Shown one piece after another: positions 36,156 to 61,168 of a stretch of 64,000 nt of DNA. The notes below the pieces were generated by a model, which searched no databases, was not told where the DNA came from, and was given only the letters and a program-made list of their open reading frames with translations. The stretch covers positions 1 through 64,000 of the IMG/VR virus record IMGVR_UViG_3300044797_000098; one strand, written 5' to 3'. The position numbers were made by a program, and so were the translations under genes. Each line of letters starts with the position of its first letter. The stretch's first letter is position 1.

Positions 36156-37364
36156 ATGCAACGAACGATCTCTATCAAAATTGACGCACCAGCAGAGTTT
36201 TTAGATTACCTAAAAGCTTGCAACGAGCTATACAGCAGGTATGTTGAATGGTGTTTCGAGACCAAGAGCTACAATAAGAATAAATCTCATACCGAGCTAT
36301 ATGAAAAGTTTCGTCAGGAGTTTCCAAGTATCAATTCTGCCACCATTCAGTGTATTAGAGATAATGCACTTGAAAGCGTCAAGGCATTGAAATTCAAATT
36401 CAAGCCGAAAAAGAAGCCACATTCTCATATTCGTTTTGATAAGAGAACGATCGCTCTTCGAGGTGATCAACTATCGTTTGCATGGTCAGGTGATCGTATC
36501 AAACAGATCATAAAGATACCAGAGTTTTTCAAAAAACGATATGGATCTTGGAAGTTTCAGGCAGCAACAATAGGCTATAATAAGCATAAGAAGCAATTCG
36601 TTGCTAATCTGATTTTTCAATCAACTGCTCCGCAGGAGCTTCGCTCTTCTGCTCCGCAGGAGCTTCGCTCTTCTGCTCCGCAGGAGCTTCGCTCTTCTTC
36701 ACCTGAAAAGAAAGGTGATCGTGTAGTTGGTATCGATCGTGGACTGTATAACATAGTGTCTCTATCTGATGGTTTCAAGTATGCTTCCAATCAGGTCAGA
36801 AAAGTGAAACGAGAAGTCTTGTTTCTCAAAAAGCAACTTCAAACAAAAGGCACCCATAGTGCTAAACGCAAATTGAAAGCGTTGTCTTGCTATGAGAAGC
36901 GGTTTAGTTTGAATGTCAATCATATCATCAGTAAATTGTTAGTTTCGTTGCCATACGATATTTTTGTTCTCGAAGACTTGAAAGGTATTCGTAAGCAAAA
37001 ATCAAAAGGCAAACGACTAAACAAGTGGCTTGCTAACTGGTCATTTTGGCAATTAGAGGCTCTTCTGGGATATAAGGCAGAGATATTTTGCAAGCAAATT
37101 GTCAAAGTCGATGCTCGATATACCAGTCAAAAGTGCTGCAATTGCGGTCAAGTAGAAAAAGCCAATCGTGATGGCTCACATTACCACTGTGAGCGTTGTG
37201 GATTTAGGTGTCATTCGGATACGAATGCTGCTAAAAATATCCGCAATAACTATCTCATCTCTGCTGCTGAAAAACAGAAGGCAGAGCAGGCTATGTGTCA
37301 ATTAGCCGAATGCTTCGTATCGAAAGATACAGAAACAAGCCCCGTTGCTTTTAGCACGGGGTAA
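36156..37364 (+). CDS. tnpB: TnpB RNA-guided nuclease, copy 3, with a 3x APQELRSS insertion
   Basis: GIDRG, LEDL, HSDTNA RuvC motifs and zinc finger; right end CAAGCCCCGTTGCTTTTAGCACGGGGTAATTGA. Confidence 0.93.
   Translation: MQRTISIKIDAPAEFLDYLKACNELYSRYVEWCFETKSYNKNKSHTELYEKFRQEFPSINSATIQCIRDNALESVKALKFKFKPKKKPHSHIRFDKRTIALRGDQLSFAWSGDRIKQIIKIPEFFKKRYGSWKFQAATIGYNKHKKQFVANLIFQSTAPQELRSSAPQELRSSAPQELRSSSPEKKGDRVVGIDRGLYNIVSLSDGFKYASNQVRKVKREVLFLKKQLQTKGTHSAKRKLKALSCYEKRFSLNVNHIISKLLVSLPYDIFVLEDLKGIRKQKSKGKRLNKWLANWSFWQLEALLGYKAEIFCKQIVKVDARYTSQKCCNCGQVEKANRDGSHYHCERCGFRCHSDTNAAKNIRNNYLISAAEKQKAEQAMCQLAECFVSKDTETSPVAFSTG
36625..36696. repeat. Three tandem copies of the 24-nt hairpin element
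   Basis: (CTGCTCCGCAGGAGCTTCGCTCTT)x3. Confidence 0.95.
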
Positions 37365-43519: not shown

Positions 43520-43825
43520 TCACGCATCGGAATCGAGGTCGAGCACTTCCACGGCCTTCTTGGCGGTCTTCTCCGACTTCGGAGCATACCCACGCAGGAA
43601 GTTGCTGTTTCCCGACTTGCCCCCACCAACTACGGGCGTTAAGGTTTTTCCTTCCGCCTTGAAGTTAGTGGTACCCTCGGGCAGACTTGACGACATCGTG
43701 GCGACAAGCTCGCCCATCTCCGTACCAATGGCGTCGATCTCCGACTCCAATTCAGCTCGGCGATCGGCAAGCGACTTGTAAGCATTGAACGCGGTCTTAA
43801 GGGCAATGACGTTGACAGTAGACAT
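43520..43825 (-). CDS. Coiled-coil hypothetical protein (start MSTVNV), downstream of a hammerhead
   Basis: Paralog of 10520..10795. Confidence 0.65.
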   Translation of the reverse strand: MSTVNVIALKTAFNAYKSLADRRAELESEIDAIGTEMGELVATMSSSLPEGTTNFKAEGKTLTPVVGGGKSGNSNFLRGYAPKSEKTAKKAVEVLDLDSDA

Positions 43826-43865
43826 GTGTGTATCCAACTTTCTTGTATGACGTTTCAAGACAACT

Positions 43866-43929
43866 GGTCTCATCAGGACGTGAATTATTACACGTCTACG
43901 CATATGCTTTTGACATATGCGTTTCGACC
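43866..43929 (-). ncRNA. Hammerhead ribozyme, type II (HHR-1)
   Basis: GGUC-GAAA-CGCAUAUG..CAUAUGCG-UA|GACGUG..CACGUC-CUGAUGA-GACC: complete core and three stems. Confidence 0.92.
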
Positions 43930-43937
43930 TTGAAAGT

Positions 43938-43965
43938 GTTATAGCAAGCGTTTAGATTCGTGCAA
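43938..43965 (-). promoter_or_regulatory. Sigma70-like promoter directly upstream of HHR-1
   Basis: TTGCAC-16 nt-TATAAC with an extended -10 TG. Confidence 0.55.
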
Positions 43966-43972
43966 GCAGTTT

Positions 43973-44374
43973 TTAGATGGCTCGCGAACGATACCGTCCG
44001 CACGCAACGTTATCCCACAACTTCTCCACCTTCACACCATAAGCGCCATTGCCGGTATTGTGTCTAGAAAGCAATGACACAATGTAGTTAGGCGAGTATC
44101 TTCCAGCGAAGTGTTTGATTAGATCTTGCGGAGTGGTATAACTGATACCCTGGCTTTCACGTGCACACATGAAAGCGTGCATCTCCTTCTCAACTGCCTT
44201 AGGAGGACTCATGTCAGAGACGTTCACATTCGGAAACGTTTCCTCCTGTTCTACCACATTAGCCACCGACACCTTACTCGTGCCAATACTCTGGATGAAG
44301 GTACGAGCAAGATCCTTATGCCCACCACTGAGGAGAAGAGTAAGAATCTGTAGGTTTGCGTCGTTGAGATTCAT
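43973..44374 (-). CDS. Hypothetical protein, possibly winged-helix
   Basis: 133 aa; C-terminus TTPQDL...YIVSLLSR...GRY. Confidence 0.5.
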   Translation of the reverse strand: MNLNDANLQILTLLLSGGHKDLARTFIQSIGTSKVSVANVVEQEETFPNVNVSDMSPPKAVEKEMHAFMCARESQGISYTTPQDLIKHFAGRYSPNYIVSLLSRHNTGNGAYGVKVEKLWDNVACGRYRSRAI

Positions 44375-44412
44375 TGGTATGTGTGTCCTTGTATGTTGTT
44401 CGTTGTATATTG

Positions 44413-44467
44413 GGTTTCAATACCCACGACAATACCTCACATGAGATATTGTCATAGAGACGGAAAC
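44413..44467 (-). repeat. 55-nt intergenic hairpin, copy 2
   Basis: Near-identical to 41830-41884. Confidence 0.85.
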
Positions 44468-45542
44468 CTTTCCCTTACAGCGTATGCGTATACCTTCCAA
44501 CATCCTTCACATACTCACTAATCGTATACGCACGCACATTGCTTTCGCCTAACTCCTTTGTCCAGAAACTGATTACCTTATCCAAGGTATGACCACTGTT
44601 GTCATGAACGGTGCTATTCAGCACCGAATGTGCTCCGTTCTCCTCAACATCACACACAAGCGTATGATGGCATCCGTTGAACCGATCCCAATATATCGTC
44701 GCTACTGTTCGCATATGATATCCTCTTCTCCCACAATGTCGTATGACTCGATTATGTCGTTATCAGATAGAGCAAACGCAACGGCGTCTCTCCAATCTGC
44801 AACTACGGAATCCTCCTTCACTTTCGCATCTTGTAAGTTTAGGAGCCTAAGATGCAACAACATCATATCAGATGCTACATCCTGCGCTTTCTCCCACGCT
44901 TCCAACGTTCGCTTACAAGGGTTCTCCTTGTAGGTTTGCATGTATGCTTGCACGCGAAGCCTGCTTACTTCCAAGGCTTCAAGCGTCGTTTGACCCGTGT
45001 GTAGTGTGATAGCATTCATTGGCTCACCAGCCAATAGCAGAGAAACAACCAGCCACCCCATGCACACACATGAGGCGCGTAGTATGCAATCTTGGAATAC
45101 ATTGTGATCCTTTCGGGCAATGACTGAATTACCCAACAATATCCTACACATACGTATGCATAGGATATTAGTAGATACGTCAGTTCTTACTTACACCGTC
45201 TCCCAGCGCACATCCTTGACCCTCTGTTGTAGGCTGGTATCGTACATGTACGCCTCTTCGTCTTGGCTCCAATCGGTCAATTGTAGGAGACGTGGAAGAG
45301 CTTTGCGCGCTTGTGCGAGCTTGGGATACTGCTTATCAATACTCCTACCCGACATGACGTGTGTGATGGCATACCCCGGCTTATTGAACGCGCGGGTTAT
45401 GATGAGATGTCGCATCTTGGAGTACCGTGTGGTCTTTTCCCACACGAATTCCCCGCTGTCGGACTTCTCGTTAGTGATCACGGTAAAGGTGAGAGGGCGT
45501 CGTTTCATGTAGGTTTCTCCGTGTTGTGCATTCGTTGTGCAT

Positions 45543-45648
45543 GGTCTCATCAAGCGAGACTTACAGTCTCGCCCAATGCCTACCTTTCGGTAGTCATCAG
45601 TTAGGGCATAACCCTAATACATACAGGGACTTACCTGTATGTTTCGAC
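45543..45648 (-). ncRNA. Hammerhead ribozyme, type II, interrupted by a 47-nt insert (HHR-2)
   Basis: GGUC-GAAA-CAUACAGG..CCUGUAUG-UA|UUAGGG..CCCUAA-CUGAUGA-[insert]-UGAUGA-GACC. Confidence 0.7.
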
Positions 45649-45662
45649 CTTGTCTTGTAGTA

Positions 45663-46211
45663 TTAGAGCGTGACGGGGATGGTAATGTGCGACACCGCCT
45701 TCCGTGCGATTGACCGACCGTCAATCTTGAACCCTAGATCCTGTAGTTTTTTCACCTGCACGGCAGTATTGCTCGTTTCGAGAATACCTTGTAGGTCATT
45801 CACCGACACCTTGATACTCGAATCGAAGGCACCCATACGCGCCTTCAAGCTCGCAGAAAGACCGTCATACTCCGCCTTTTCCTTACGAAGTGCAATGATG
45901 TGGGTTTCGAGCACAACGTTGAGTGCTTGTCGCACCTTCTGCTCGGCTTCATTCTTCGCGCGTTGCTGTACCGTTGCAAGTGCGTTGATTGCCCGCACAC
46001 ACACCGTCCCGATGTCGTCGAATGTAAGCTTGTCGAACGATGGGTTAAGATTGCCACCTTTCCCCGCATCCCAGCACAAGGCATGCAATGCGCGGAAGTG
46101 TGCGGTAATCTCCGCGATCTGCTCACCGTTGAACTGTTTCGGCGCTTTCTTTTCTTCCTTTTCGGCAGAGGGAACGACAGTGGCAACCGTGGTGGTATTG
46201 TTCGTGGTCAT
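45663..46211 (-). CDS. Hypothetical helical protein (likely start MTTNNT)
   Basis: GGAG RBS before MTT; coiled-coil composition. Confidence 0.65.
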   Translation of the reverse strand: MTTNNTTTVATVVPSAEKEEKKAPKQFNGEQIAEITAHFRALHALCWDAGKGGNLNPSFDKLTFDDIGTVCVRAINALATVQQRAKNEAEQKVRQALNVVLETHIIALRKEKAEYDGLSASLKARMGAFDSSIKVSVNDLQGILETSNTAVQVKKLQDLGFKIDGRSIARKAVSHITIPVTL

Positions 46212-46500
46212 GTGAGTGTATCTCCTATGTTGTGTTGTTTGACTTTCGAGCTTATTGCCCGACAATGTATGCAAGACTATGATCTTACACACATTAGCAG
46301 ACACTCAAGCCTTACAGGATGAAGTTCTTTTCAGTGTATTCTTTCGTCTTAGCTCGTTTCCCGCTAAGTCTCTTGGTAGCCTTGCTGCTCATTCCTACCC
46401 TATGCGTCATATGGTAGCGGATATCCCGTATCTGCTTACTTGTGAGCGTTTTGCACTTATCGCATAGACAATTGCTTGATTGTAGGATTAGACACTTCAT

Positions 46501-46629
46501 TCATCCACCCTTGTGCAGCCATCGGCTACTTGTAAACGTATGCCGTAGTTTCTTGCTCGGGCGCACACCACCTTTCCAGTGTGCTACATGTGCTCTCTTG
46601 AAGGTTAGCCGTTTCTTCTTTATCACCAT
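46501..46629 (-). CDS. 42-aa basic peptide (not in ORF track)
   Basis: MVIKKKRLTFKRAHVAHWKGGVRPSKKLRHTFTSSRWLHKGG; SD GAGGAG 7 nt upstream; stop abuts the next ATG. Confidence 0.55.
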   Translation of the reverse strand: MVIKKKRLTFKRAHVAHWKGGVRPSKKLRHTFTSSRWLHKGG

Positions 46630-46633
46630 TCCC

Positions 46634-46695
46634 GATCTCCTCAGTGTGCGCCTAACGCACATACCGCCCTAACAGTGTTAGGAGCGGTTTCGATC
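46634..46695 (-). ncRNA. Hammerhead ribozyme, type II (HHR-3)
   Basis: GAUC-GAAA-CCGC..GCGG-UA|UGUGCG..CGCACA-CUGAGGA-GAUC. Confidence 0.88.
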
Positions 46696-46869
46696 TTGCC
46701 GACATTGTTAGCGTCTAGCCGGTATAGGCTACTTGTGATAGCCGTATGGTATAGTATTAGATTGTGGTATTATCTGCTTTCTTTGCACTCGCGCCTAGCG
46801 TTTCTTACTTCCCTATCTCGTCGCGCTTTGGCTTACAATATCACTTTCCGCTATCAGAGCCGATAATGT

Positions 46870-47328
46870 AGTCTAGTTGCTTCCCTTGGGAATACAACGA
46901 CAACATTGTGGCATAAGCGGGGACCATGTAAGACAATCGCCGAACCGTAGAATTAACCTTCTAGGTGCGATATGTCGTATCGTTAGAATAGAGACTGTCT
47001 ACTAGGTACACTTCCGATATTAGCGACTTTGCCTTACCTATCTTACCTACAGCGACTAGACCTTACAAGGTCATACCCCAAGGGGTATTGGTCGGCACTG
47101 TAGCGGGATAAGGCTTTCAGACTGCTTGCCAGTCTTCGCCCTGCTAAAACGGGTATTCCGTCGTATGCTCTACCTTAGGCGACATGTGGCAGACCCACAC
47201 CGTTCTAAGGTTTCTAACGCTAGTGTAGGAGCTACCTACTTGTTCCGTTTCCCCACTAGCTACTGCGGGGTGCTATCTAGAGAGAACGGCGGGCGGTTGA
47301 ATTACTTTAGGCCTCGCGGGGCTTTTTT
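46870..47328 (+). ncRNA. Candidate structured non-coding RNA
   Basis: Nested stems ending in a perfect Y junction (47031-47114), further hairpins, and a terminator-like end. Confidence 0.45.
47311..47328 (+). terminator. Putative intrinsic terminator
   Basis: GCCTCGCGGGGC followed by TTTTTT. Confidence 0.45.
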
Positions 47329-47419
47329 CTTCGCCCCTACCGTTCCGCTCTCGACAGATAGACTATATTGCAGACGTTGTGCCATGGCATATGGATCGGA
47401 TAAGTATATGATATTATTG

Positions 47420-48470
47420 ATGTAGGGAAAAGACTTAGTATGATCTTGCTGTCTCGGTTTTAAGAAAAACCAATGAGATCATAACGTTGGACGATCATAG
47501 GGTATGCAAAGATTGCGGTGTGATAATGTGGGATAGTGTTGCTTCGGTCTAGGAAGCGTTCGGAGCGCTCGGGATATCTCGGCAAGGGTAGCAGGGGGAA
47601 AACGCTTCCTAGCTGGCACCTAGCGCCAGCAAACGGCAATGCTCGAAGGCAGGGTGCGGGCGCTCGACGTTGGCTGGAATGTAGTTGCTGGTAGGGAGCT
47701 CCGTCAGGATGTAGTACAATGTAGGGAAAGGTGGGTGGTTCCGTTCTTGCAATGATGCACAAGTTATGCCAAGTCGACGGCTCGTTTCTTGCAATAGGTT
47801 CAGGTGGGATAACGGAATACATACGATACAGACTTCCCTACATACTGAACGGTTGGCACTGGCTGAACCGTTGAACGTATAGTGTAGGGTGAGCAGTGTC
47901 GTATGTAGGAGATCAGTGGATGATGTAGTATGATTGTTGCGAGGTCAAGTATAGGTCAAGTGCTTATCACGTATTGGTCAACAACAACTCACTGATAACG
48001 CAATGTAGGATAACAGGAGAGATGTAGCCGTCTCAACACCATTGGATTACCTGAACAAGATGTAGGAGAATAGGGAGAAAGGTAGGTAGAGGTAGGGAGG
48101 AATTACAGCGATACGGTTGGCACGGTTCTTGGGGGTTGGCGGGAAAGGTAGCCAGAGGTGGGATGAATGCTGACAGGGGAAAGGTGGGATGATGTGAGAT
48201 GTTCAGGTGGTGTGATGTAGGGGAGACGGGGAGATGTGGCAGCTTGGTGCCTAGTGTAGGGGGAACGCAGGGCGTATAGCCGGAGTAGCGGGTTGGAAGA
48301 CAATGTATGATATGTAGTGAAAAGAAAGGAAATGTAGTGGAATGTAGAATGATGTAATAGTTGTAAAGAAGTGGAATGAAATGGAGGGAAAGGTGGGAGA
48401 CGGTGGGAGGAATGGAGGGGATGTGGTGAGGTATCGCGTAAGGTGTGGCGGTGTGGGGTAATGTGGGCCT
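47420..48470. other. Purine/G-skewed non-coding tract at the GC-content junction
   Basis: 50 of 60 bases are purines at 48361-48420; 11 co-oriented GTAGG. Confidence 0.7.
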
Positions 48471-48845
48471 CGTTAAATAATAGAACGGTACCAAAACGAA
48501 TCAATACAATACTATCAAACGGTAGCAAACAATATAAAACAAAATAATCTGAATACAACATCAAACAATAGCAACAATTAATAATAACCAATAAAACGGT
48601 TGTAATAAATATAACAACTACATCAATAACAATAGTTTATCTAATCGTTCCTCTGTTATATCCTCTGGCAATAAATAATCAAGAAATACACTAGGCTTGT
48701 CATCATCAGCATATTCAATAAGGGTTGATTTACTATCAATAAACGATGTAATGCAACTATCGAATTCAGCAACTGCGATTGAATCATTATATAATATATC
48801 CTGTACTATATGTAATGGTATATTAGTTAAATATATCTTTATCAA

Positions 48846-49214
48846 TCATTTTGATGCCCAGTTCTTATATACCAAAATTACCCATTCTTTAAACTCTTTT
48901 ATTGTTTTATTATGTTTAGCATAATTACAAAACTTACAACAAGGAACAAGATTGCTCTTTGTATGTGGTAAATTGCTATCCACTCTATCTAATCCATTAT
49001 ATATAAATGTCCCATTAGATCTTGAATTTTCCGATGATTCTGAACTTGAAAGAAACTTGTTGTACTTTTGTTTTGGTTTAATTCCACAATAATAACATTG
49101 TTGTTGAGACAGAGTATAAAAATCATCAAAAGACAAATCATCATCTTTATATCTATCATAATAGATCTTTTTTGCACTAGAAATAATAGGTGAAAATACC
49201 TTTTTCTTTACCAT
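48846..49214 (-). CDS. HNH-type endonuclease
   Basis: CYYCG...GLDRVDS...H..SN.VPCCKFCN. Confidence 0.75.
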   Translation of the reverse strand: MVKKKVFSPIISSAKKIYYDRYKDDDLSFDDFYTLSQQQCYYCGIKPKQKYNKFLSSSESSENSRSNGTFIYNGLDRVDSNLPHTKSNLVPCCKFCNYAKHNKTIKEFKEWVILVYKNWASK

Positions 49215-49296
49215 AAATACCCTTAAATTGTTAAAATTATTAGAATGGTACCAAAATAATACGATTGGATCTCTATTATTCTTTAATATAAAAACC

Positions 49297-49953
49297 CTAT
49301 AATCCCACAGCCTTAGAAAACTCTGCCACAGCCTTACGATATTTATTGGGATTATATTGCTTTAATACATTAAACATATTCTTCATATTTAACATATCAG
49401 TTGCAGGACTAGATTGATCGATGATATTATCCCACTCCATAGCTTTCTGTTCTTTGGTTTTAAGAGATTTAGTTTTAATATTATTTTTAAAAATTGGTAT
49501 AATTTTTTGTTCCATTAAATCAAAAAACCTTTGCACCGGAACATGTCTTACCCAAGATAACATATAATCTCTATGAAGGGAAACCGGTATAAATTTTTTA
49601 TATCTATTAAAATCATTAACCGAATCCGTAAGATTAGTATAGAACTCATGATCATCAAGAACATGCGCTTCATTGGAAACTCCAACATTACTATAATTTT
49701 CTTGATCATATTCTAAATCACGAATTTTATTGGATGGTAATCCACCATGCTTACCAGTAATATGTTTTATGAATGATTGCATAAAATGTTGCAACTCATG
49801 TCTCGCAATATCTTTTATATTTTCAATCGTATATTGTAAAATTTCCAATGTTCTGGCTAACTGGAAGTTCTTTTTGATATCTGCCTTGATTATTATCCTG
49901 CCAATTACGAACTCATTCTTAGCATTGGTAACTCTTGGCCACTCCTGCCACAT
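49297..49953 (-). CDS. Hypothetical protein
   Basis: 218 aa AT-rich ORF. Confidence 0.65.
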   Translation of the reverse strand: MWQEWPRVTNAKNEFVIGRIIIKADIKKNFQLARTLEILQYTIENIKDIARHELQHFMQSFIKHITGKHGGLPSNKIRDLEYDQENYSNVGVSNEAHVLDDHEFYTNLTDSVNDFNRYKKFIPVSLHRDYMLSWVRHVPVQRFFDLMEQKIIPIFKNNIKTKSLKTKEQKAMEWDNIIDQSSPATDMLNMKNMFNVLKQYNPNKYRKAVAEFSKAVGL

Positions 49954-50230
49954 CCCACCCCAATTGAGATCTTTTGTAAGTTAAATCAGTAACATAATTG
50001 TGTTATATAAATTAATATATTGGGGGAAATGATATAAAATTGCGATATGGCAGTATTCTATTTTATCATTATATTTAGAAGATAAGCATTTCATAATATA
50101 AGACTTAATTTGTGAATTGGAATGACAATAAGATATTTCATCCGTTGATAGAATAATATAACACGTTGCTGAATAGGGATTGTTATAGAGAGCAGTATTA
50201 GCGTCGTTGAGCCAGCATGAATTACAGGGT

Positions 50231-50953
50231 TTAGACGGACTGAAGTCCTTGCAAGTTTTCATTATTGTATTGGTTAAATACTTTAATGAATGCTAGACTA
50301 ATAGTAAGGAGTTTCTTTTTATTAGATTTGGATAACTTGAAATTGTTATCTTGGAGGAAAGGCATGCCTGTTGCGAGATAGGCTTGAATCTCATCTGTAT
50401 ATACTTTTGGCGTATAACCTTTGGTTTTTAACCAATGTGTGATTGATAATTTAATATCTTTTGGAATAGATTTTACGAGAGAAATCATAGCAGATTTATA
50501 GATCTTATTCGTATAGAAAAATCCGTGAGCCAACTCATGATTTATAGTTATATTATCTTTTTTTATGGAACCAATAAGATAAAAATCTTGGGAGGATTTT
50601 TTACAATGTTTATAGATATTAAGCAATTCATAATCATATATATTACGATCTGGAATCATAAGATTATGAACTTTTGGAATTATATCACCCGGAATATTAA
50701 ATCCATTCCAATCAGATGGATATGTAAATGATCCATTACCATATTTTTTTGAATACCAGCGCATAAAAGAAAGAATCGTGAAAGATTTATTGCGAAACTT
50801 CGGAGAGGACGATTCATAAAACTCTTGATAACGAAGAAAATACATGCAAAGATCATAACGATCTTGAAATGTTAAATGAAATATATTTGGTTTAATTTCT
50901 TTTAAGGTGTAATTTGCGGTTTTCATATCAGGACAATTACCTTTTCTAACCAT
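50231..50953 (-). CDS. Hypothetical protein with HExxH motif
   Basis: INHELAHGFF. Confidence 0.6.
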   Translation of the reverse strand: MVRKGNCPDMKTANYTLKEIKPNIFHLTFQDRYDLCMYFLRYQEFYESSSPKFRNKSFTILSFMRWYSKKYGNGSFTYPSDWNGFNIPGDIIPKVHNLMIPDRNIYDYELLNIYKHCKKSSQDFYLIGSIKKDNITINHELAHGFFYTNKIYKSAMISLVKSIPKDIKLSITHWLKTKGYTPKVYTDEIQAYLATGMPFLQDNNFKLSKSNKKKLLTISLAFIKVFNQYNNENLQGLQSV

Positions 50954-51211
50954 TCTATGTATTCTGGATAATATAATTTTATTGCTTCTTTTAGATATAT
51001 GAAATAATCACCTTCGAATCCCTCGGTTTTTATTATGGTTTTAATATAACTTTTCATATTATTTTTATCTTTTAAATCGAACTCATCCTTCCACCATTCA
51101 ATCCAGCATTTAGATTGAACCAGAGTGGATATGTCATGGTTTTTTTGCCATGTACATACGAAACATAATGGTATATTTAAAGATTTACAAAACATTGTTA
51201 TATATTAGTGT

Positions 51212-51508
51212 ATGAGAAAAGTTGTTATTGAGTATGTGAAAAAAAGTTTGAGGAGAGTTTGGGGGCGGAGCAAGCAAAGGAATGGTGCATTGAAGAGCGC
51301 TAAGGTTGAGAGAGGAAAGTATAGATGCGCTTGCTGCGGGAAAGTGTTCAGGCGAAAAGATATCGAAGTTGATCATAAAATTGCCGTGGGGCGGTTTGTT
51401 GATTTCGATACGTACATTGAAAGGTTGTTCGTGGATACGAAAGGGCTCCAAGTATTATGCAAAGGATGCCATAAAATTAAAACTAAAAAAGATGTAAAAT
51501 CATTTTAG
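51212..51508 (+). CDS. HNH endonuclease
   Basis: CACCG...EVDHKI...LQVLCKGCH. Confidence 0.8.
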   Translation: MRKVVIEYVKKSLRRVWGRSKQRNGALKSAKVERGKYRCACCGKVFRRKDIEVDHKIAVGRFVDFDTYIERLFVDTKGLQVLCKGCHKIKTKKDVKSF

Positions 51509-52314
51509 GATTCTAAATTTATCCGCTTCCTCCTCCGTAATCATTGTGAATGTAATACCGGCGATTGAAAAATATGGCATATCATCTTTTGTCCTACCCG
51601 AAATTGCACATCGTATTATATTATTGGGACTTCTGGCATAAGCATCATTAACCAATCTAATATAATCTTTTGCTGGTAAAAGAAAGTCATATTCGCCAGT
51701 TGTTTCAGCATAATACATTATAACGTATAATGAATATCCATCATTCGTATATACTGATTTTGCCAGTAATGTTTTGGCAACAATATCTTCATCTATATAT
51801 TTTTTCATAGCAACACGAGTAATTTATCGAGATCGTTTTTTAGATGAGGAAAATCTCTGTTAATAACTTCAATCGCATATTCGATCATAGGAACGCCCTG
51901 CTCCTGACCAATCATATTGAATGTTGAGATCATTACATTCATTGCTTTTTTTTGTTCTTCAATACCTTCAACCTCATACATAATTTGACAAATTGATTTC
52001 TTAAAGTTTTTTACGAGCCTTTGGATTTTTTTGTTCGTCATGTTAATATGATACTTTCCATTTAATTTATTCGTAGTAGGGCCAAAATTATATTAATATA
52101 ATATATTTTCTAAAAGATTCTTCTAAATGTGGGTAATAGTAAATTGCGATAGATAGTAAATCATTTGAAATTAATGCATCATTGTAGATTTTGTTATAAT
52201 TTATGAAAGTTTTAATTCTATCCTTATCATCGATGCAATCGATTAAATCAGTAGCAAGTTTGTAGAAAATAACATTATTCCATTGACCAATAATTTTATT
52301 CATTGTAAATCGTT

Positions 52315-52857
52315 TCATCTCAATAATAAGATTGAATTTATTTTAGAAAACAACTTATCTTTATCTTGGAAATTGAGTTTTTCAAATGGGATATATTGTA
52401 TATCTATTTTTTTGTCATCGCATACAATAAATGATGTTTTATTGGAAAAATTATTTACGACTGTATAATATTTATTATTGTAATAAAATTTAAAATATTC
52501 TAAAAGAGACTGTGTGTTGAATGCACTATAAGGTCTATCATAAAAAATATTAATAGATCTTGAAAATGTTTCGAGTGGTTGATTGCAGTTTTTACAAGTT
52601 TTTTCTAAAATGATATCTAATTCATACAGAGACGTAAATACATCGGTCGAACTATCATGCATTATACGGCCGTCAATAATAGAAATAGAAAACTGATGTA
52701 TATCGGTTTTTGAATCTATAAAATAATCAGTTTTATATCTGATAGTCAATTTATTATTTGATATTATGATTTTATCTGCTTGGGTGGATGTTATTAATAA
52801 ATCATTATCACACAATGGACAACGCTGATATTCATATATGAACTGTTTTAGATCCAT
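52315..52857 (-). CDS. Tandem paralog family member 1 (N-terminal CPLC)
   Basis: CPxC start and K.F.KI.SI.LL end shared with the two adjacent genes. Confidence 0.7.
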   Translation of the reverse strand: MDLKQFIYEYQRCPLCDNDLLITSTQADKIIISNNKLTIRYKTDYFIDSKTDIHQFSISIIDGRIMHDSSTDVFTSLYELDIILEKTCKNCNQPLETFSRSINIFYDRPYSAFNTQSLLEYFKFYYNNKYYTVVNNFSNKTSFIVCDDKKIDIQYIPFEKLNFQDKDKLFSKINSILLLR

Positions 52858-52862
52858 TTAAA

Positions 52863-53555
52863 TTATTTATCCATCAAAAGAAAAATTGAATCAATTCTAG
52901 AAAATATTTTTTTAGGATTTTCAAATTTAAAATAATCATCATCTACAAGATTAAGTCTTTTTTCTTTGTAAAAATTATGTGCATTGGAGCCATCGATACT
53001 CATTTCTGCAAGAGCAAATGATGTTTTAAATATGTTATAGTCATTTATAATTTTAATTTGCTTACCTATGCCTTTATCTATGGTATATAATTTATATATT
53101 TCGTGATAGATTTGGAGTTCAACTATACCAAAAACATAACTTCCATCATCATTTTTCCTTATATCTGAATCTGTTGCTATAAAATCGCCCTTTGCTTCGT
53201 ATTCGCAAATATTTGTGAGTTCATTAATACAAGAGATTTTTAAATTGAAGAAAGATAGACTACCATCAAAACTTGCAGTTAAACTATTATCGGCTATATT
53301 TATTTGAGTTTGCAATTTTTCTATATTGATTATTTGAGTTTCGCCCGGTTTGAATTTAACAGATATGGTTTCAGACATATTATCCAATCCATCAAAAATA
53401 TTATCAAATCGATTTTTTAATTTTGATGCTTCATTAGTTTTATGATCAATATAAATCGTGGTATATATATCGTATTCTAATACATTGGAACAAATAGGGC
53501 AAGTACTACGATATTCTATTAATTTTGGAAATGAATCGAACTCTCGTGCTGTCAT
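52863..53555 (-). CDS. Tandem paralog family member 2
   Basis: CPIC...KKIFSRIDSIFLL. Confidence 0.7.
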   Translation of the reverse strand: MTAREFDSFPKLIEYRSTCPICSNVLEYDIYTTIYIDHKTNEASKLKNRFDNIFDGLDNMSETISVKFKPGETQIINIEKLQTQINIADNSLTASFDGSLSFFNLKISCINELTNICEYEAKGDFIATDSDIRKNDDGSYVFGIVELQIYHEIYKLYTIDKGIGKQIKIINDYNIFKTSFALAEMSIDGSNAHNFYKEKRLNLVDDDYFKFENPKKIFSRIDSIFLLMDK

Positions 53556-53556
53556 T

Positions 53557-54084
53557 TTAACCTAATAATTGAATAATTTTTAGTTTTTTGTCTATAAGTT
53601 TTTTTGACGAAAAATCAAAATCGATTAATGGCATTGTTATTGTTTTTGTCAAATAATTTGATGTTATATGAATTGTTGAAATAGAGTTATTAAAATCGTT
53701 ATTAACGATGAAATGAACCGAATCTGCTAGCATTCTTACGATATGATTTTTTTCCAGTATTATATTGTCTATAAGTAATTTATCTTTTAATAAATCACAA
53801 GTCCCAGAATAATAAAAATGATATTTATTACACTGACGGCCAATAATTAATTTAGGCACATCAGGACTAATAAATTGTAAATAATTTTCTATTATATTAT
53901 TATTGAATAGATCGATTAATATTTTTTTATTTGAGTCTTGTTGAAAAACTGTTAAATAACTATTGTTTAGCTCACAGCCAGACATTCCGGATAATGTTAT
54001 TATTGGTTCGGTTCTCTTTTTGCACAACGGGCAAAATTCAATAAAATTAAAAAAATCAAATAAATTATTAAATTGTTGAGCCAC
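53557..54084 (-). CDS. Tandem paralog family member 3
   Basis: CPLC...KLKIIQLLG. Confidence 0.7.
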   Translation of the reverse strand: MAQQFNNLFDFFNFIEFCPLCKKRTEPIITLSGMSGCELNNSYLTVFQQDSNKKILIDLFNNNIIENYLQFISPDVPKLIIGRQCNKYHFYYSGTCDLLKDKLLIDNIILEKNHIVRMLADSVHFIVNNDFNNSISTIHITSNYLTKTITMPLIDFDFSSKKLIDKKLKIIQLLG

Positions 54085-54108
54085 TACCTATTATATATCA
54101 ATTAAAAA

Positions 54109-54780
54109 TTATTTTGGTATTTCGTGCTCTCGAACTCTTTGGATAAGTTGTGGCAACGATGAATTTTCAAAATTATACTTAGCCTTAAATATATTTAATG
54201 CTTTTTGTGTTTCAGGCCCTAACGAACCATCTTCTTTAATTGGAAGCATATCGCCAAATGGAACTAAGATTTGGTTTAATTTAGTTTGAATATCTTTCGA
54301 TATCGATGGATATTTTGATGGCGTGATTTTAATTTCTGGAACCTTAACTGTGGATTCTTCCGAAGATATAGGAGATGCTGGTTGTTTAGCTACCTGTGAT
54401 TTTAATGAATCTATATACGGGAATAGATTTTTAGTAGCGAAATTTAAAGTGTTTTGATCTTTTGATTTCATTAGAGATTGATATATTTGCGTTGCAATAT
54501 TTGCTAAATCTTGAAAAGATAATTCGCCTTGTGGATATCTTAGTGAGCTGTATAAATTGCGTGCTTCAATGGGGAAATTAGCCTGATCGGCAGTCCAACG
54601 ATCAGTAAGGAGTTTTACCAACGCTTTTCTGGCTGGTTCTGTTGAGTGTGTAGCTTGAGCTGCTTTATTGAATTTTTTTTCAAATTTATTTGCTAATTCA
54701 ATGGACTTGGAAAAATCATATTTTTTATGACTAGAATTAACTAATTGTTCAAATTTTTTGACTTTATCAAATAAATCCAT
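54109..54780 (-). CDS. Protein with C-terminal peptidoglycan-binding-like motif
   Basis: DGSLGPETQKAL resembles the PG_binding_1 signature. Confidence 0.5.
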   Translation of the reverse strand: MDLFDKVKKFEQLVNSSHKKYDFSKSIELANKFEKKFNKAAQATHSTEPARKALVKLLTDRWTADQANFPIEARNLYSSLRYPQGELSFQDLANIATQIYQSLMKSKDQNTLNFATKNLFPYIDSLKSQVAKQPASPISSEESTVKVPEIKITPSKYPSISKDIQTKLNQILVPFGDMLPIKEDGSLGPETQKALNIFKAKYNFENSSLPQLIQRVREHEIPK

Positions 54781-54907
54781 AATTTAGCTCCATTGACTTA
54801 ATATAAGTCTATTATTAAAATATTCCATTATTGCCAGCGGTAAATATAAATATTTTGTCTCATTGACTGTTATTATTGTGTGCTTAAATTTAAGCGAGAG
54901 GTAAGAA

Positions 54908-55888
54908 ATGAACAATTATTCGTTTGAAAATTATATAATGCAATGCTGTAAATCACGAGAATGGAACTTGCGTAAGTTTCTAAAAAAGAAACTAATTGAC
55001 GCCGGTTTTAGAATTATAGAAGATGATTATTCTTCATATAGAAAAGGAAAATATCAACAAGTACATAATATGTTGGCTATAAGGGGTACTCCAAGAATAT
55101 GTTTGGTGGCTCACACCGACGTGTGTAGAGATCATGGTGATGATATACCGGATGTTAATCCTACAATAAAAAATATGGAAATTGATGGAGAGTTTAAAAA
55201 AATTATACAAGATAAGAATTGTGAGGTACAAGTTGGCGGGGATGATAGACTCGGTGTAGCCATAAATAGCTGGATAGCATTAAATACTGGATACGATTTA
55301 GGTTTATTATTTACTACCGATGAGGAAGTAGGAGTCGTTAGCGCGGAATATGTTCATTTCCCTGAACTATTAGATTTTGATTTATTACTACAAGTAGACA
55401 GGGGAAATCGCTCTCATCAGTTAGTTAGCAGTATTGGTGGAGAATTATTATGCTCATATACAACGGCTAATAGATTGATACAGATATCCAAAAACATAGA
55501 TCATCCAAGATATATTGTTGATGGTATGTTAACAGATGTGCTGGCATTGAAAATAAATCATATGTGTAAAGAAGCGGTTAATATGACATGCGGATATCAT
55601 AACTCAATCGGAGCTCAAATGAATGAGTATATAGATATTCAGGAAGCAAAAGATACTATGCAGTATGTGTCCAGTATAATTCAATATTATGATTTAGAAG
55701 AAGATAAAAATGAACATAGTGAAGAAACTATCTGGCAAGAGTCATACGAGCGCACAAAGTTTCCATCTGGCAGAACATACTCAAATACATTGAGAGGTAG
55801 AGCTTCGGTGTCCCGAAGACGATATTACGATGATGATTTATTTAGCGATGATGAATACGAAAAAGATAAAAATAGCTGGGAATATTAA
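54908..55888 (+). CDS. M20/M28-family metallopeptidase-like protein
   Basis: LVAHTD, GGDDRLG, TTDEEVG, VDR and GYHN ligand motifs. Confidence 0.8.
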   Translation: MNNYSFENYIMQCCKSREWNLRKFLKKKLIDAGFRIIEDDYSSYRKGKYQQVHNMLAIRGTPRICLVAHTDVCRDHGDDIPDVNPTIKNMEIDGEFKKIIQDKNCEVQVGGDDRLGVAINSWIALNTGYDLGLLFTTDEEVGVVSAEYVHFPELLDFDLLLQVDRGNRSHQLVSSIGGELLCSYTTANRLIQISKNIDHPRYIVDGMLTDVLALKINHMCKEAVNMTCGYHNSIGAQMNEYIDIQEAKDTMQYVSSIIQYYDLEEDKNEHSEETIWQESYERTKFPSGRTYSNTLRGRASVSRRRYYDDDLFSDDEYEKDKNSWEY

Positions 55889-56364
55889 GGATTATTTGGC
55901 TCTACCTTACGAATCCATGGTGGATCCAAATGATATGGATTAAAATCATCAGTCACACATTCACCAACGAATTGATTTTCCCAATTTTTGGGTCTTCGAC
56001 AAGGATATGGCCTAGCACGTTGTAGATAAATTAACGCTGTAAGATACACTTGGTTAATTTGCAGAGTAATATTTGGAGGCCCAACCTTATTTTGTTCAAC
56101 TGAAACTAATCCATCTTTTGCAAATAATACAATATCTGCCAAATCTCGATTAGTTTGATCCCAAAGATCTCGTAGTACTAAAATACGATACCCATCATAT
56201 AACTGATCAGAAACCCAATATCCATCGGCTGCGACATAACCATCGAATTGTGCTGCGGTTAAAACTTCGGTAATAAATAATTGACGAACAAAAACACTTA
56301 ACACCTGACTTGACAAATCATTATTAATGAATATGATAGCTGGTGGAGAAGTGATAATTGCCAT
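55885..56364 (-). CDS. Hypothetical protein with three DGY motifs
   Basis: 159 aa ORF. Confidence 0.6.
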   Translation of the reverse strand: MAIITSPPAIIFINNDLSSQVLSVFVRQLFITEVLTAAQFDGYVAADGYWVSDQLYDGYRILVLRDLWDQTNRDLADIVLFAKDGLVSVEQNKVGPPNITLQINQVYLTALIYLQRARPYPCRRPKNWENQFVGECVTDDFNPYHLDPPWIRKVEPNNP

Positions 56365-56412
56365 ATAAATATAACGTATAATGCCAACAAAACCAGAAAG
56401 GAATTAATAAAA

Positions 56413-56928
56413 ATGAACGAAATTAAAGATCCTCATCCAACATTTAAATTCGCATTGAGAGAAGATTTGAAAAATGACAAAAGATTTTTACCAACCAGAT
56501 CAACCCCGGTAAGTACCGGCTGGGATGTTTGTTGCGCGCAAGAAAATAGAAAACAAATTATTCTCAGACCCGGACAATTTGTAAAGATCCCATTGGGATT
56601 TAGAATGATAGCACCAGAAGGATGGTGGCTGCAACTAGCACCAAGGTCATCAACATTCGCTAAAAAATCATTACATTGTTTATATGGAGTATTAGACAAT
56701 GATTGGATGGGATACACCGCGCTAGCAGCACAATATATACCAGATGTTAATTCATTAGGTAAAGATCTAAAATTAGAGTTCGGGGAACCTATCGGACAAC
56801 TAATACCGTTCGAACTAAAAAATATGAATGTAGATCAAATTGATAACGAACAATTTGAGGAAATGATGAAAAATAAAAAAAGTGTGAGAGGGGTTCAGGG
56901 ATTTGGTGAAACACGAGGATTAAAATAA
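56413..56928 (+). CDS. dut: dUTPase (trimeric)
   Basis: GWDV, APRSS, GVLDNDW.G, QLI and RG..GFG.T motifs. Confidence 0.9.
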   Translation: MNEIKDPHPTFKFALREDLKNDKRFLPTRSTPVSTGWDVCCAQENRKQIILRPGQFVKIPLGFRMIAPEGWWLQLAPRSSTFAKKSLHCLYGVLDNDWMGYTALAAQYIPDVNSLGKDLKLEFGEPIGQLIPFELKNMNVDQIDNEQFEEMMKNKKSVRGVQGFGETRGLK

Positions 56929-57474
56929 GTGTCGTATATAGATCCAACAGGATGGATTCAGACTTACACAGGAAAGAAGTTTTTTCCAATGAATCCAAAG
57001 CCAGAAGATATATGTATAGAGGATATTGCACATAGTCTTTCTATGATATGTAGATTTACTGGACATTCAAAAGAGTTTTATTCCGTGGCACAACATTCAA
57101 TATATGTTAGTGAATTATGCAGCGAAAAATGGGCACTACATGGGCTCTTACATGATGCAGAAGAAGCATATACAAATGATCTTGCTCGTCCAGTAAAACG
57201 ATTGAAAGAGTTTGAGTTTTTCAGAAGAGCTGGTGAAAACATACAATTAGTAATTCGTCAGAAATTTAAAATGTATTGGGTAGAGCCAGAAGAAATACAT
57301 ATGATAGATGCTAAAATGCTTGCAACGGAAGCAAGAGATTTAATGTCTCCATTGCATCCTGATTGGAAACAGCCAACTGAATCATATAGTTTCAATATTA
57401 AACCAGTACAACCAAAAGAAGCAGAAGAAATGTTTTTGAAAAGATTTTATGAATTAACTAAGGAAATCAAATAA
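56929..57474 (+). CDS. HD-domain 5'-deoxynucleotidase (YfbR-like)
   Basis: DIAHSLS..CRF.GH...YSVAQHS...LLHDA.EAY..D. Confidence 0.85.
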   Translation: MSYIDPTGWIQTYTGKKFFPMNPKPEDICIEDIAHSLSMICRFTGHSKEFYSVAQHSIYVSELCSEKWALHGLLHDAEEAYTNDLARPVKRLKEFEFFRRAGENIQLVIRQKFKMYWVEPEEIHMIDAKMLATEARDLMSPLHPDWKQPTESYSFNIKPVQPKEAEEMFLKRFYELTKEIK

Positions 57475-57812
57475 TGTCTAAAATAGTAGTTCAGGGACGT
57501 GAACCTCATGAAATAAAAGCCATGGAGGAAAAACATAAAAAAGAAGCAGAGGCAAAAAAGAAAACTGCTGCTCCAAAAATAAAATCATATTATGATGTTA
57601 AAGTGGAATGTTTGATTCCGACAACAATGATATATAGAGTATTCGCTGATGATGAACGCGAGGCTATGGAGTTATTTAATAAAATGTCAAAAGAATATAA
57701 AGCACCTACGCAAGTAAAGCCAAATTATTCATTAAAAAAAATAATCAAAGCAACTGTGTATGCGTCTGGTAGTAGTGTAATAAAACTAGTTAAAAACTAT
57801 ATGGTTAGATAA
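57474..57812 (+). CDS. Hypothetical protein
   Basis: Translationally coupled within the operon. Confidence 0.65.
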   Translation: MSKIVVQGREPHEIKAMEEKHKKEAEAKKKTAAPKIKSYYDVKVECLIPTTMIYRVFADDEREAMELFNKMSKEYKAPTQVKPNYSLKKIIKATVYASGSSVIKLVKNYMVR

Positions 57813-58405
57813 TGTCTGGTATAATATATTATATTTGTGATTTAGAAACTAACGGATTAGTTTATAGAAATAATTTCCACGAAATAACTGAACTATCTAT
57901 TCTACGGGCAGATGAACGAGTACAACTATCTAGAAAAATTAAAATCAATCATCCTGAAAATAGTTCCATTGATGCATTACGCATAACCGGAAAAACGATA
58001 GAAGATTTAAAAACAGGAATATCCACACCACAATTAATAAATGATGTTGAGATTTTTTTACATGAGGACGATGCAACGCCTGAACATAGATGTATTGTCG
58101 GGCATAATATTATTAATTTTGATAGGAACTTTTTATTTAGTACTTGGGAAAAGTATGGAAAATTATTTCCAGCTAATTTATGGTTAGATACTATGTTTAT
58201 GGTTAAAAGTATAAATAAAAAAAACGGTGATAAAAAAGCCAAATCAAATTTGAAGGACTCATTAACGAAGTTTGGTATATATAATAATTTTAAATTACAT
58301 TCTGCCAAAGGTGATTCTCAGGCAACATATTTTTTATGGCAAAAATTAATGCAAGAAACTGATCATCTTGAACATTTAAAACGTATTCCACACGAAGAAA
58401 AATAA
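57812..58405 (+). CDS. DEDDh 3'-5' exonuclease (Pol III epsilon-like)
   Basis: DLET, GHN...FD and HSA..D motifs. Confidence 0.88.
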   Translation: MSGIIYYICDLETNGLVYRNNFHEITELSILRADERVQLSRKIKINHPENSSIDALRITGKTIEDLKTGISTPQLINDVEIFLHEDDATPEHRCIVGHNIINFDRNFLFSTWEKYGKLFPANLWLDTMFMVKSINKKNGDKKAKSNLKDSLTKFGIYNNFKLHSAKGDSQATYFLWQKLMQETDHLEHLKRIPHEEK

Positions 58406-59022: not shown

Positions 59023-59241
59023 ATGGTAGATAAAGATGGCGTATTAGAGTTTGAGGGCACAGTGGAAAACTTAGTTAGAGATAAAGTGTTTGTAAAAATA
59101 AATGATAATTATACTGTTATATGTACCGTATCTGGTAAAATTAGACAAAGCGGAATTAAGTTATTGCCGGGTGATAGAGTACGCGCTGAGGTTAGCGTGT
59201 ATGACACAAGTAAAGGCCGAGTTGTTTATAGAATGAAATGA
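59023..59241 (+). CDS. infA: Translation initiation factor IF-1
   Basis: 72 aa; EFEG.V...F.V......VIC.VSGKIR...I.LLPGDRV..EVS.YD.SKGRVVYR. Confidence 0.93.
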   Translation: MVDKDGVLEFEGTVENLVRDKVFVKINDNYTVICTVSGKIRQSGIKLLPGDRVRAEVSVYDTSKGRVVYRMK

Positions 59242-59248
59242 GGAACAC

Positions 59249-61141: not shown

Positions 61142-61168
61142 CTCATCGCAATAATTCGCTATTGTGTT

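What the first reader, a model, noticed from the sequence alone, without database searches (positions are those of the whole stretch)
43853..43965. Canonical type II hammerhead ribozyme at the very 5' end of an early transcript
Seen in sequence (minus strand): full core CUGAUGA/GAAA, GUA cleavage triplet (cut between 43897 and 43896), and stems I (6 bp), II (GACC/GGUC) and III (9 bp). Loop I UAAUU can pair with the 3' tail AGUUG as a pseudoknot. A TTGCAC-16-TATAAC promoter would start at about 43931, directly before it. Established: hammerhead cleavage leaves a 5'-OH, which evades 5'-monophosphate-dependent decay. Inference: a natural RiboJ-like insulator that standardises or stabilises early mRNA.
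Basis: partly seen in the sequence, partly recalled or inferred. Interest (0 to 1): 0.8.

Follow-up and report, generated by a model that had tools for sequence, protein, structure and literature searches.

The report
Hammerhead ribozymes between jumbo-phage genes
The flagged sequence is a real self-cleaving hammerhead RNA, one of three set between small genes of a 406-kb phage, and it most likely cuts a long phage messenger into gene-sized pieces; this arrangement has been known in phages since 2011.

Summary
On the minus strand, 43929-43866 carries a complete type II hammerhead: GGUC, GAAA, a 9-bp stem III, GUA with the cut between 43897 and 43896, a 6-bp stem I, CUGAUGA, then GACC. It is not a chance match. 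A descriptor scan finds two such motifs in the window against 0.01 expected. A covariance model built only from other phage contigs scores it 49.5 bits. Seven metagenomic relatives of the downstream gene carry a hammerhead at the same place, with both hairpin stems rewritten by compensatory changes.

The TTGCAC-16-TATAAC promoter is weak and absent from every relative, where an upstream ORF ends 7-9 nt before the ribozyme. The loop I/tail pseudoknot does not covary.

The window holds two more copies: a canonical one at 46695-46634 and an aberrant one at 45649-45543. All belong to a large, phage-enriched subfamily that Rfam's type II model misses at its threshold. Family members typically sit 2 nt after a stop codon and about 20 nt before the next start.

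Best reading: intercistronic mRNA processing that leaves hairpin-capped ends. The RiboJ analogy is reasonable in function, but the "very 5' end" claim is not supported. This is a new member of a known kind.

The parts
43866..43929 (-). HH1, the flagged type II hammerhead: GGUC / GAAA / stem III hairpin / GUA, cut between 43897 and 43896 / stem I hairpin / CUGAUGA / GACC.
   Evidence: Sequence. MFE fold is the three-way junction, z -4.8. Descriptor hit. R1 model 49.5 bits, E 2.6e-13. RF02276 18.3 bits, below threshold. Orthologues show fully compensatory stems.
43826..43865 (-). Conserved 40-nt leader between HH1 and the start codon: AG-NN-GUCUU, then CAUAYAAGAAAGYUGGRUAYACAC. GUCUU can pair with GAGAC of the core and stem II strand once the 5' fragment has left.
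   Evidence: Alignment A4. A 2-nt indel in the L126 group shows the stretch is non-coding. Folds of the 3' product are not statistically distinctive.
43520..43825 (-). Gene H, 101 aa, no family assignment. Its start is the ATG at 43825-43823, not the ATG at 43903 that the longest ORF uses.
   Evidence: ORF list. No Pfam or PHROG hit. Seven relatives at 75-86% identity all start at the aligned ATG.
43938..43965 (-). Status: unsupported.
   Evidence: Present once. Not reported by the promoter scan. Not conserved in the orthologous loci.
43973..44374 (-). Gene G, 133 aa, an ORFan. It is the upstream cistron on the same strand, and no terminator-like site lies between it and HH1.
46634..46695 (-). 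HH2, a second canonical type II hammerhead: GAUC / GAAA / stem III / GUA, cut between 46662 and 46661 / stem I with loop UUAGG / CUGAGGA / GAUC. Core residues GAGGAG (46642-46637) double as a Shine-Dalgarno-like site 7 nt before the ATG at 46629.
   Evidence: Descriptor. Sequence. R1 54.2 bits, E 8e-15. The orthologue in L003 differs inside the ribozyme only at the free position N7.
45543..45649 (-). HH3, a hammerhead-like element that is canonical from GGUC through CUGAUGA (45600-45594; predicted cut between 45618 and 45617). Two hairpins and a UUGAUGA repeat (45593-45547) then separate the core from the only GACC (45546-43) able to close stem II. It lies 13 nt after the stop of gene C and before gene D (ATG 45508).
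   Evidence: R1 39.4 bits with a 2-nt core gap. Sequence. The MFE fold closes GGUC with the distal GACC, z -7.0. Activity is unknown.
45663..46629 (-). Block of genes A (46629-46501, 42 aa, very basic), B (46500-46312) and C (46304-45663), bracketed by HH2 and HH3.
   Evidence: ORF list. A relative of gene C at 71% identity lies in L003.
43973..45508 (-). Block of genes D, E, F and G, bracketed by HH3 and HH1.
   Evidence: ORF list.

Best explanation
HH1 is a genuine type II hammerhead self-cleaving ribozyme. It belongs to a large, phage-enriched subfamily with these features:
- a 4-bp open stem II (GRUC/GAYC);
- a 6-bp stem I closed by G-C;
- a loop I that starts with U;
- an invariant A just before stem II;
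- no loop I/tail pseudoknot.

It is one of three hammerhead-type elements spaced over 2.8 kb in a run of small minus-strand genes at the start of a 406-kb phage contig. It travels as a unit with the leader and coding sequence of gene H.

Proposed mechanism (inferred):
1. The genes are transcribed as a polycistronic RNA.
2. HH1 folds as soon as its last strand is made and cuts after A43897.
3. The upstream RNA ends in the stem III hairpin plus one nucleotide carrying a 2',3'-cyclic phosphate.
4. The gene H mRNA begins with a 5'-OH on the first paired nucleotide of the stem I hairpin.
5. Only 4 bp of stem II hold the two products together, so they separate.

Both products are therefore hairpin-capped. 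The gene H message gets the same 5' end whatever lies upstream. In that sense it works like a RiboJ-type insulator, but between cistrons rather than at a transcription start.
For: Identity:
- Complete core and three helices, and the MFE fold.
- 2 motifs against 0.01 expected.
- Model R1, built without any sequence from this genome, gives 49.5, 54.2 and 39.4 bits for the three sites and at most 13 bits elsewhere.

Conservation:
- All 7 metagenomic relatives of gene H carry a hammerhead directly upstream.
- In the alignment of these, the L003 site, a second L130 site and the three window sites (8 distinct sequences), 100% of cells pair and 12 of 16 pairs show changes on both sides. Slid-partner controls give 19-48% pairing.

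Family:
About 9 in 10 of them fold as type II hammerheads, often several per locus and up to 9.
- The same pattern in cellular genomes gave a hammerhead fold in only 5 of 120 hits.
- Residues not in the pattern are invariant: A at -1 in 123/123 and loop I position 1 U in 123/123. HH1 and HH2 have both.

Intercistronic role:
- In 138 family members the same-strand upstream ORF stops a median of 2 nt before the ribozyme, and within 10 nt in 96.
- The next start is a median of 20 nt after it. An SD-like motif precedes 94 of 130 starts.
- In the HH1 orthologues the upstream ORF ends 7-9 nt before the ribozyme.

Literature:
- Clustered hammerheads flank genes in prophages and cleave roughly 2-kb polycistronic transcripts in vitro.
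- A haloviral hammerhead sits 13 nt before the first ORF of an early transcript, whose mapped 5' end lies within 3 nt of the cut (PMC3088659).
- Type II hammerheads near phage-like genes cleave in vivo in Desulfovibrio vulgaris (PMC8782182).
Against: - No cleavage, transcript or end-mapping data exist for this genome.
- Rfam's type II model does not reach threshold for HH1 and gives nothing for HH2.
- HH1's loop I has 8 nt (7 in its orthologues), whereas the family has 5. No tertiary stem I-stem II contact could be identified, so fast cleavage at cellular Mg2+ is not assured.
- The 43-nt spacer before HH1 is unusually long for the family and could hold a promoter of a type the scan does not model.
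- The stabilising effect of hairpin-capped ends is inferred from general knowledge of bacterial mRNA decay, not tested here.
Confidence: 0.7

Rival explanations
1. A promoter (TTGCAC-16-TATAAC) fires at about 43931, so HH1 is the first structure of a new, early transcript. Its job is to remove the promoter-derived 5' nucleotides, as a promoter-proximal RiboJ-like insulator.
For: The two hexamers exist with 16-nt spacing and a TG two bases before the -10 element. The 43-nt gap between gene G's stop and HH1 is longer than in most family members. This reading does not exclude read-through processing.
Against: The -35 hexamer matches at 3 of 6 positions and the -10 hexamer lacks its final T, so the promoter scan does not report it. 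In all seven orthologous loci the upstream sequence is unrelated and an ORF ends 7-9 nt before the ribozyme. The family median gap of 2 nt leaves no room for a promoter. Host and polymerase are unknown.
Confidence: 0.2
2. The hammerheads are passengers: conserved junction sequences of exchangeable gene cassettes, or remnants of a mobile element. Their cleavage would have little consequence for gene expression.
For: Similarity between the window and the gene H relatives starts exactly at the ribozyme, with unrelated genes upstream. HH3 looks disrupted. Neighbouring gene identities are not constant in the family (PMC3088659).
Against: Compensatory changes keep every helix intact at 75-86% protein identity. 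Core residues and several residues outside the helices are invariant across 123 members. That is purifying selection on the fold, not on a DNA junction.
Confidence: 0.07
3. Pairs of hammerheads excise the RNA between them (HH2-HH3 or HH3-HH1). The 5'-OH and 2',3'-cyclic phosphate ends are then joined by an RtcB-type ligase into circular or spliced RNA.
For: Three ribozymes lie on one strand within 2.8 kb. The end chemistry suits RtcB, which is established knowledge.
Against: Perreault et al. looked for such products from clustered prophage hammerheads and found none (PMC3088659). Nothing in the window points to a ligase or to a function for circles.
Confidence: 0.03

Closest known systems
Type II hammerhead ribozymes of bacteria and prophages (Perreault et al. 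2011, PMC3088659; Rfam RF02276)
   Same: Identical catalytic core and connectivity: stems I and III capped, stem II open. Found in phage or prophage context, with several copies flanking single genes or short gene blocks on one strand.
   Different: Stem II has 4 bp where the Rfam consensus has 2. Stem I is 6 bp with a short loop that starts with U. There is no loop I/3'-tail pseudoknot. The sites score below the Rfam gathering threshold (18.3 bits for HH1, nothing for HH2), and none of the roughly 35 family members in 10 loci is reported at threshold.
HHphage of haloviruses HF1/HF2 (PMC3088659)
   Same: A hammerhead in a viral leader a few tens of nucleotides before the start codon. There, the mapped mRNA 5' end coincides with the cleavage site.
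   Different: HHphage is a structurally variant, salt-dependent hammerhead of an archaeal virus, and it precedes the first ORF of a mapped early transcript. Here the core is canonical and transcript mapping is lacking.
RiboJ, a synthetic insulator made of the sTRSV hammerhead plus a hairpin
   Same: Cleavage gives the downstream message a constant 5' end independent of what was transcribed before it.
   Different: RiboJ is an engineered part placed right after a promoter, uses a different hammerhead architecture, and has an added hairpin to expose the RBS. The phage elements are natural type II ribozymes sited between cistrons. This comparison rests on my own knowledge of RiboJ, not on a tool result.
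Type II hammerheads of Desulfovibrio vulgaris near phage-like genes (PMC8782182)
   Same: Type II architecture, a phage-like neighbourhood, and in vivo cleavage shown by capture of both end types.
   Different: Those lie in a bacterial chromosome. Their sequences were not compared with this subfamily here.

Membership tests
Hammerhead ribozyme | Core C3 U4 G5 A6 N7 G8 A9, G12 A13 A14, A15.1-U16.1, H17 not G | tested here: met
   HH1: CUGAUGA, GAAA, GUA. HH2: CUGAGGA, GAAA, GUA. HH3 has the residues, but an insertion follows A9.
Hammerhead ribozyme | Base pairs directly adjacent to the core (1.1-2.1, 10.1-11.1, 15.1-16.1) and three helices around the junction | tested here: met
   HH1 has G-C, G-C and A-U, and its MFE fold is the three-way junction. 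HH2 passes the same descriptor.
Hammerhead ribozyme | Helices supported by covariation in homologues | tested here: met
   Loci were found through the neighbouring protein, not through RNA structure. 100% of cells pair and 12 of 16 pairs change on both sides; slid controls give 19-48%.
Hammerhead ribozyme | Self-cleavage by internal transesterification, giving 2',3'-cyclic phosphate and 5'-OH ends | not testable with these tools
   Needs an in vitro or in vivo cleavage assay.
Type II hammerhead (Rfam RF02276) | Stems I and III closed by loops, stem II open | tested here: met
Type II hammerhead (Rfam RF02276) | Score at or above the curated gathering threshold of 37 bits | tested here: not met
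   No hit at gathering. HH1 scores 18.3 bits, E 0.08, only when 91 nt are searched alone. HH2 gives no hit at E up to 10. The model also misses every family member in 10 other loci, so this reflects the model's coverage.
Type II hammerhead (Perreault 2011 consensus) | Pseudoknot between loop I and the nucleotides just 3' of stem II (stated for the majority of members, not all) | tested here: not met
   The UAAUU/AGUUG pairing in HH1 is not kept or compensated in its orthologues. Across 137 family members, complementarity equals the permuted control. No extra covariation appears in the mutual-information scan.
Phage 4-bp-stem-II type II subfamily (defined here, model R1) | A at -1, GRUC/GAYC stem II, G-C closing pair of stem I, loop I starting with U, high R1 score | tested here: met
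   HH1 scores 49.5 bits and HH2 54.2 bits with a model that contains no sequence from this genome. The signature residues are present in both. HH1's loop I is 8 nt rather than 5.
RiboJ-like promoter-proximal insulator | Ribozyme placed directly after a transcription start site | tested here: inconclusive
   The candidate promoter is weak and not conserved. No transcription data are available.

The most novel reading that the evidence does not exclude
The type II topology may be selected because it is the only hammerhead permutation that leaves a terminal hairpin on both products. If so, these elements are modular 'cistron separators' that move together with the leader and gene downstream of them, which would explain why similarity starts exactly at the ribozyme.

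Some copies may also be switchable:
- About 12% of family members carry a 3' tail that pairs with core residues C3-N7 and covaries with N7.
- HH1 orthologues keep GUCUU opposite GAGAC.
- HH3 carries two inserted hairpins next to the core.

That would make them a natural set of conformationally gated hammerheads controlling phage gene dosage.
Probability: 0.2. Interest if true: 0.6.

Novelty: new member of a known kind. Interest (0 to 1): 0.4.

Why it matters
The biological role of bacterial and phage hammerheads has been open since they were found in 2011. This locus does not change the picture, but it provides a clean test case. It has three ribozymes in 2.8 kb of a jumbo-phage genome. One of them has seven natural orthologues whose stems are fully rewritten. 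One has its core doubling as a ribosome-binding site. One is disrupted or elaborated.

The work also shows that a large phage-borne type II subfamily goes unreported by Rfam's model at its threshold. Routine annotation of phage genomes therefore misses these elements.

Tried and rejected
- Rfam at gathering threshold on the whole window, and at E up to 10 on 241 nt, gave no hammerhead. Only a 91-nt search gave a sub-threshold hit.
- DNA searches of the region against GenBank phages, in both near and distant modes, found nothing. tblastn of gene H found nothing either.
- Pfam and PHROGs gave no assignment for any of the nine small neighbouring genes.
- Genes H, G and D have no relatives in IMG/VR beyond the contig itself.
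- L003 is the one related viral contig. It is 98-100% identical around HH2, so it carries no covariation information, and it is not homologous at HH1 or HH3.
- Coding explanation: the longest ORF (43903-43520) runs through the ribozyme. However, homologues start at the ATG at 43825, and the leader has a 2-nt indel in relatives. Rejected.
- A search for a tertiary contact by loop-tail complementarity and by mutual information found nothing beyond the helices.
- The conserved roughly 600-nt non-coding block upstream of HH2 gave no Rfam match and only modest fold z-scores: -2.5 on the minus strand and -1.2 on the plus strand, with 20 shuffles each.
- Covariation in alignment A3 is partly circular, because those sequences were chosen with a pairing descriptor. 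I rely instead on A5 and on the viral-versus-cellular control.

Full report
**What is there.** The minus strand of 43931-43853 reads AA-GGUC-GAAA-C GCAUAUG-UCAAAAG-CAUAUGC G-UA | GACGUG-UAAUAAUU-CACGUC-CUGAUGA-GACC-AGUUG.... This is a complete hammerhead with type II connectivity: stems I and III are capped and stem II is open. G10.1-C11.1, G1.1-C2.1 and A15.1-U16.1 adjoin the core. The unconstrained minimum-free-energy fold is this three-way junction, with z = -4.8.

**Is it chance?** No.
- A simple type II descriptor (core, UH, stems of at least 4, 3 and 3 bp) finds two hits in the window, both on the minus strand. In 300 dinucleotide-preserving shuffles it finds a mean of 0.01 hits and never two.
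- Rfam was not helpful. It gave nothing at gathering threshold and nothing at E up to 10 on 241 nt. RF02276 scored 18.3 bits against a threshold of 37, and only when 91 nt were searched alone.

- About nine in ten of these fold as type II hammerheads: 154 motifs in 110 of the 123 loci held at that point. Many loci have several and one has nine.
- The same pattern in 596 Gb of cellular genomes also filled 120 rows, but only 5 fold as hammerheads. The descriptor is therefore not trivially satisfied by pattern hits, and the family is strongly phage-enriched.
- I aligned 60 of these sequences, none from this genome, as A3 and built covariance model R1 from them.
- On the window, R1 gives 54.2 bits at 46697-46632, 49.5 bits at 43931-43864 and 39.4 bits at 45651-45590. 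With filters off, nothing else scores above 13.4 bits.
- Rfam at threshold reports none of the roughly 35 family members in 10 other loci. The weak Rfam score therefore reflects that model's coverage, not a defect of the site.
- Residues that were not part of the search pattern are invariant or nearly so in 123 members. These are A at -1 (123/123), U at the first loop I position (123/123), a G-C closing pair of stem I (110), A at loop position 3 (94) and A at +1 (101). HH1 and HH2 carry the A at -1, the loop I U and A, and the G-C closing pair. HH1 also has A at +1, where HH2 has G.

**Orthologues.** The window is positions 1-64000 of IMGVR_UViG_3300044797_000098, a 406,470-bp contig.
- Gene H (43825-43520) has seven metagenomic relatives at 75-86% identity. 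Every one has a hammerhead directly upstream.
- Three distinct versions exist. They share the core, stem II and the flanking A and AG. Stem I is GACGUG/CACGUC, CUAUGG/CCAUAG or UCAUGG/CCAUGA. Stem III is GCAUAUG, AUGCAC or AUACAAGG with its complement.
- I aligned these together with the L003 site, a second site in L130 and the window's three sites. In that alignment all cells pair and 12 of 16 pairs have changes on both sides. When partners are slid, pairing falls to 19-48%.
- These loci were reached through a protein, so this is independent evidence for the fold.

- Similarity between the window and its relatives begins exactly at the A before GGUC. Upstream sequences are unrelated, and TTGCAC and TATAAC have no counterpart.
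- In L125, L127 and L130 a same-strand ORF ends 7-9 nt before the ribozyme, which leaves no room for a promoter.
- In the window the hexamers are weak: 3 of 6 for the -35 element and no final T in the -10 element. The scan does not list them, and it finds no terminator between gene G and HH1.
- The proposed pseudoknot (loop I UAAUU with tail AGUUG) fails too. The tail reads AG-UU, AG-UA or AG-AA in the three versions, without matching loop changes.
- Family-wide, loop I shows no more complementarity to the 3' or 5' tail than to tails of other members.
- What is conserved downstream is AG-NN-GUCUU and a leader CAUAYAAGAAAGYUGGRUAYACAC up to the ATG at 43825. A 2-nt indel shows the leader is non-coding.

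**Context and mechanism.**
- In 138 family members the nearest same-strand upstream ORF stops a median of 2 nt before the ribozyme, and within 10 nt in 96.
- The next start codon is a median of 20 nt after it. An SD-like motif precedes 94 of 130 starts. The opposite-strand control shows no such pattern.
- These are intercistronic elements. In the window, three of them divide a minus-strand run of small unassigned genes into blocks: HH2 | A-B-C | HH3 | D-E-F-G | HH1 | H and the genes downstream of it.
- This is the arrangement Perreault et al. described for prophages. They showed cleavage of roughly 2-kb polycistronic transcripts in vitro (PMC3088659). Type II hammerheads near phage-like genes also cleave in vivo (PMC8782182).
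- My mechanistic inference rests on topology. With type II connectivity, the upstream product ends one nucleotide after the stem III hairpin with a cyclic phosphate. The downstream product starts, with a 5'-OH, on the first paired base of stem I. Only 4 bp of stem II hold the two together.
- Terminal hairpins and a non-monophosphate 5' end are known to slow exonucleolytic decay and 5'-end-dependent decay in bacteria. That is established knowledge, not tested here.

**The other two copies.**
- HH2 (46695-46634) is canonical, with N7 = G. Its core and stem II strand, CUGAGGAGAUC, contains GAGGAG 7 nt before the ATG at 46629.
- In the related contig L003, a 1.1-kb block around HH2 is 98-100% identical while the flanks are 60-75% identical. 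The few differences cluster at this ribosome-binding site. N7 becomes A, a new GGAG appears downstream, and the start appears to shift to GUG.
- HH3 (45649-45543) is canonical through CUGAUGA. It then has CUACC-GAAA-GGUAG, a 14-bp hairpin and UUGAUGA before the GACC that can close stem II. It may be dead, or it may be an elaborated variant. I could not find relatives.

**Verdict.** The element is a new member of a well-known kind. Its only unusual aspects are that its subfamily lacks the textbook pseudoknot and escapes Rfam's threshold. No cleavage or transcript data exist, so activity and role remain inferred.

Noticed in passing
L010, L016, L027, L030, L031, L038, L056, L062, L090, L106 and others (family loci): In 16 of 137 family hammerheads the 3' tail right after stem II reads N'UCAG, complementary to core residues C3-N7 (CUGAN). 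N' matches N7 in 15 cases and wobbles in 1. About 1.7 such cases are expected from shuffled tails. This looks like a covarying alternative hairpin that would sequester the core strand, perhaps after cleavage.
   Followed up: partly
window 46214-47310: A 1.1-kb block is 98-100% identical to contig IMGVR_UViG_3300031251_000004 (L003), while both flanks are only 60-75% identical. About 600 nt of it (46698-47310) has no convincing ORF on the gene strand. Its right edge coincides with a plus-strand terminator-like hairpin at 47309-47324. No Rfam match; fold z -2.5 on the minus strand and -1.2 on the plus strand.
   Followed up: partly
window 46614-46661 versus L003 4640-4690: The only cluster of differences inside that near-identical block lies at the 3' end of HH2 and the start of gene A. 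N7 changes G to A, which removes GAGGAG. A 2-nt insertion creates a new GGAG, and ATG is replaced so that GTG becomes the likely start. This looks like a compensated shift of the ribosome-binding site.
   Followed up: partly
window 47200-48430: YCCTACA is over-represented: 25 copies in the window against 9.6 expected, and 10 of them lie on the minus strand within 47224-48261. Purine-rich direct repeats (GGGAAAGGTGGG-like on the plus strand) occur at 47718-48430. This may be an iteron, origin or promoter cluster in the non-coding stretch upstream of the hammerhead gene block.
   Followed up: no
window about 48000: Sharp compositional break: G+C is 43-48% for 1-48000 and 25-38% for 48001-64000, and GC skew changes sign there. 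The low-GC side encodes an IMPDH/GMP-reductase-family protein (59249-60271) and ThyX (60521-61141).
   Followed up: no
window 6-1190 (-), 2657-3829 (+), 12606-14402 (-), 36156-37364 (+): Four ORFs match IS605/TnpB-type transposase families (phrog_506, phrog_12300). The 598-aa one also matches the Pfam Cas12f1-like TNB domain. That is an unusual load of TnpB-like genes for 64 kb of a phage contig.
   Followed up: no
L130 3309-3378 and L131 704-773: In two relatives a second type II hammerhead (48.7 bits) sits immediately after the gene H homologue, so that gene is bracketed by ribozymes there. The window has none at the equivalent place.
   Followed up: no
window 1489-1562 (-): A single tRNA gene (Rfam tRNA, 53.7 bits), next to the TnpB-like ORFs.
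   Followed up: no
window 45619-45642 versus L126 39-62: Stem III of the aberrant HH3 (AUACAGG-UAAGU-CCCUGUAU) closely resembles stem III of the L126-group orthologues of HH1 (AUACAAGG-CAAGU-CCUUGUAU). This hints that hammerhead copies are exchanged or duplicated between sites.
   Followed up: no
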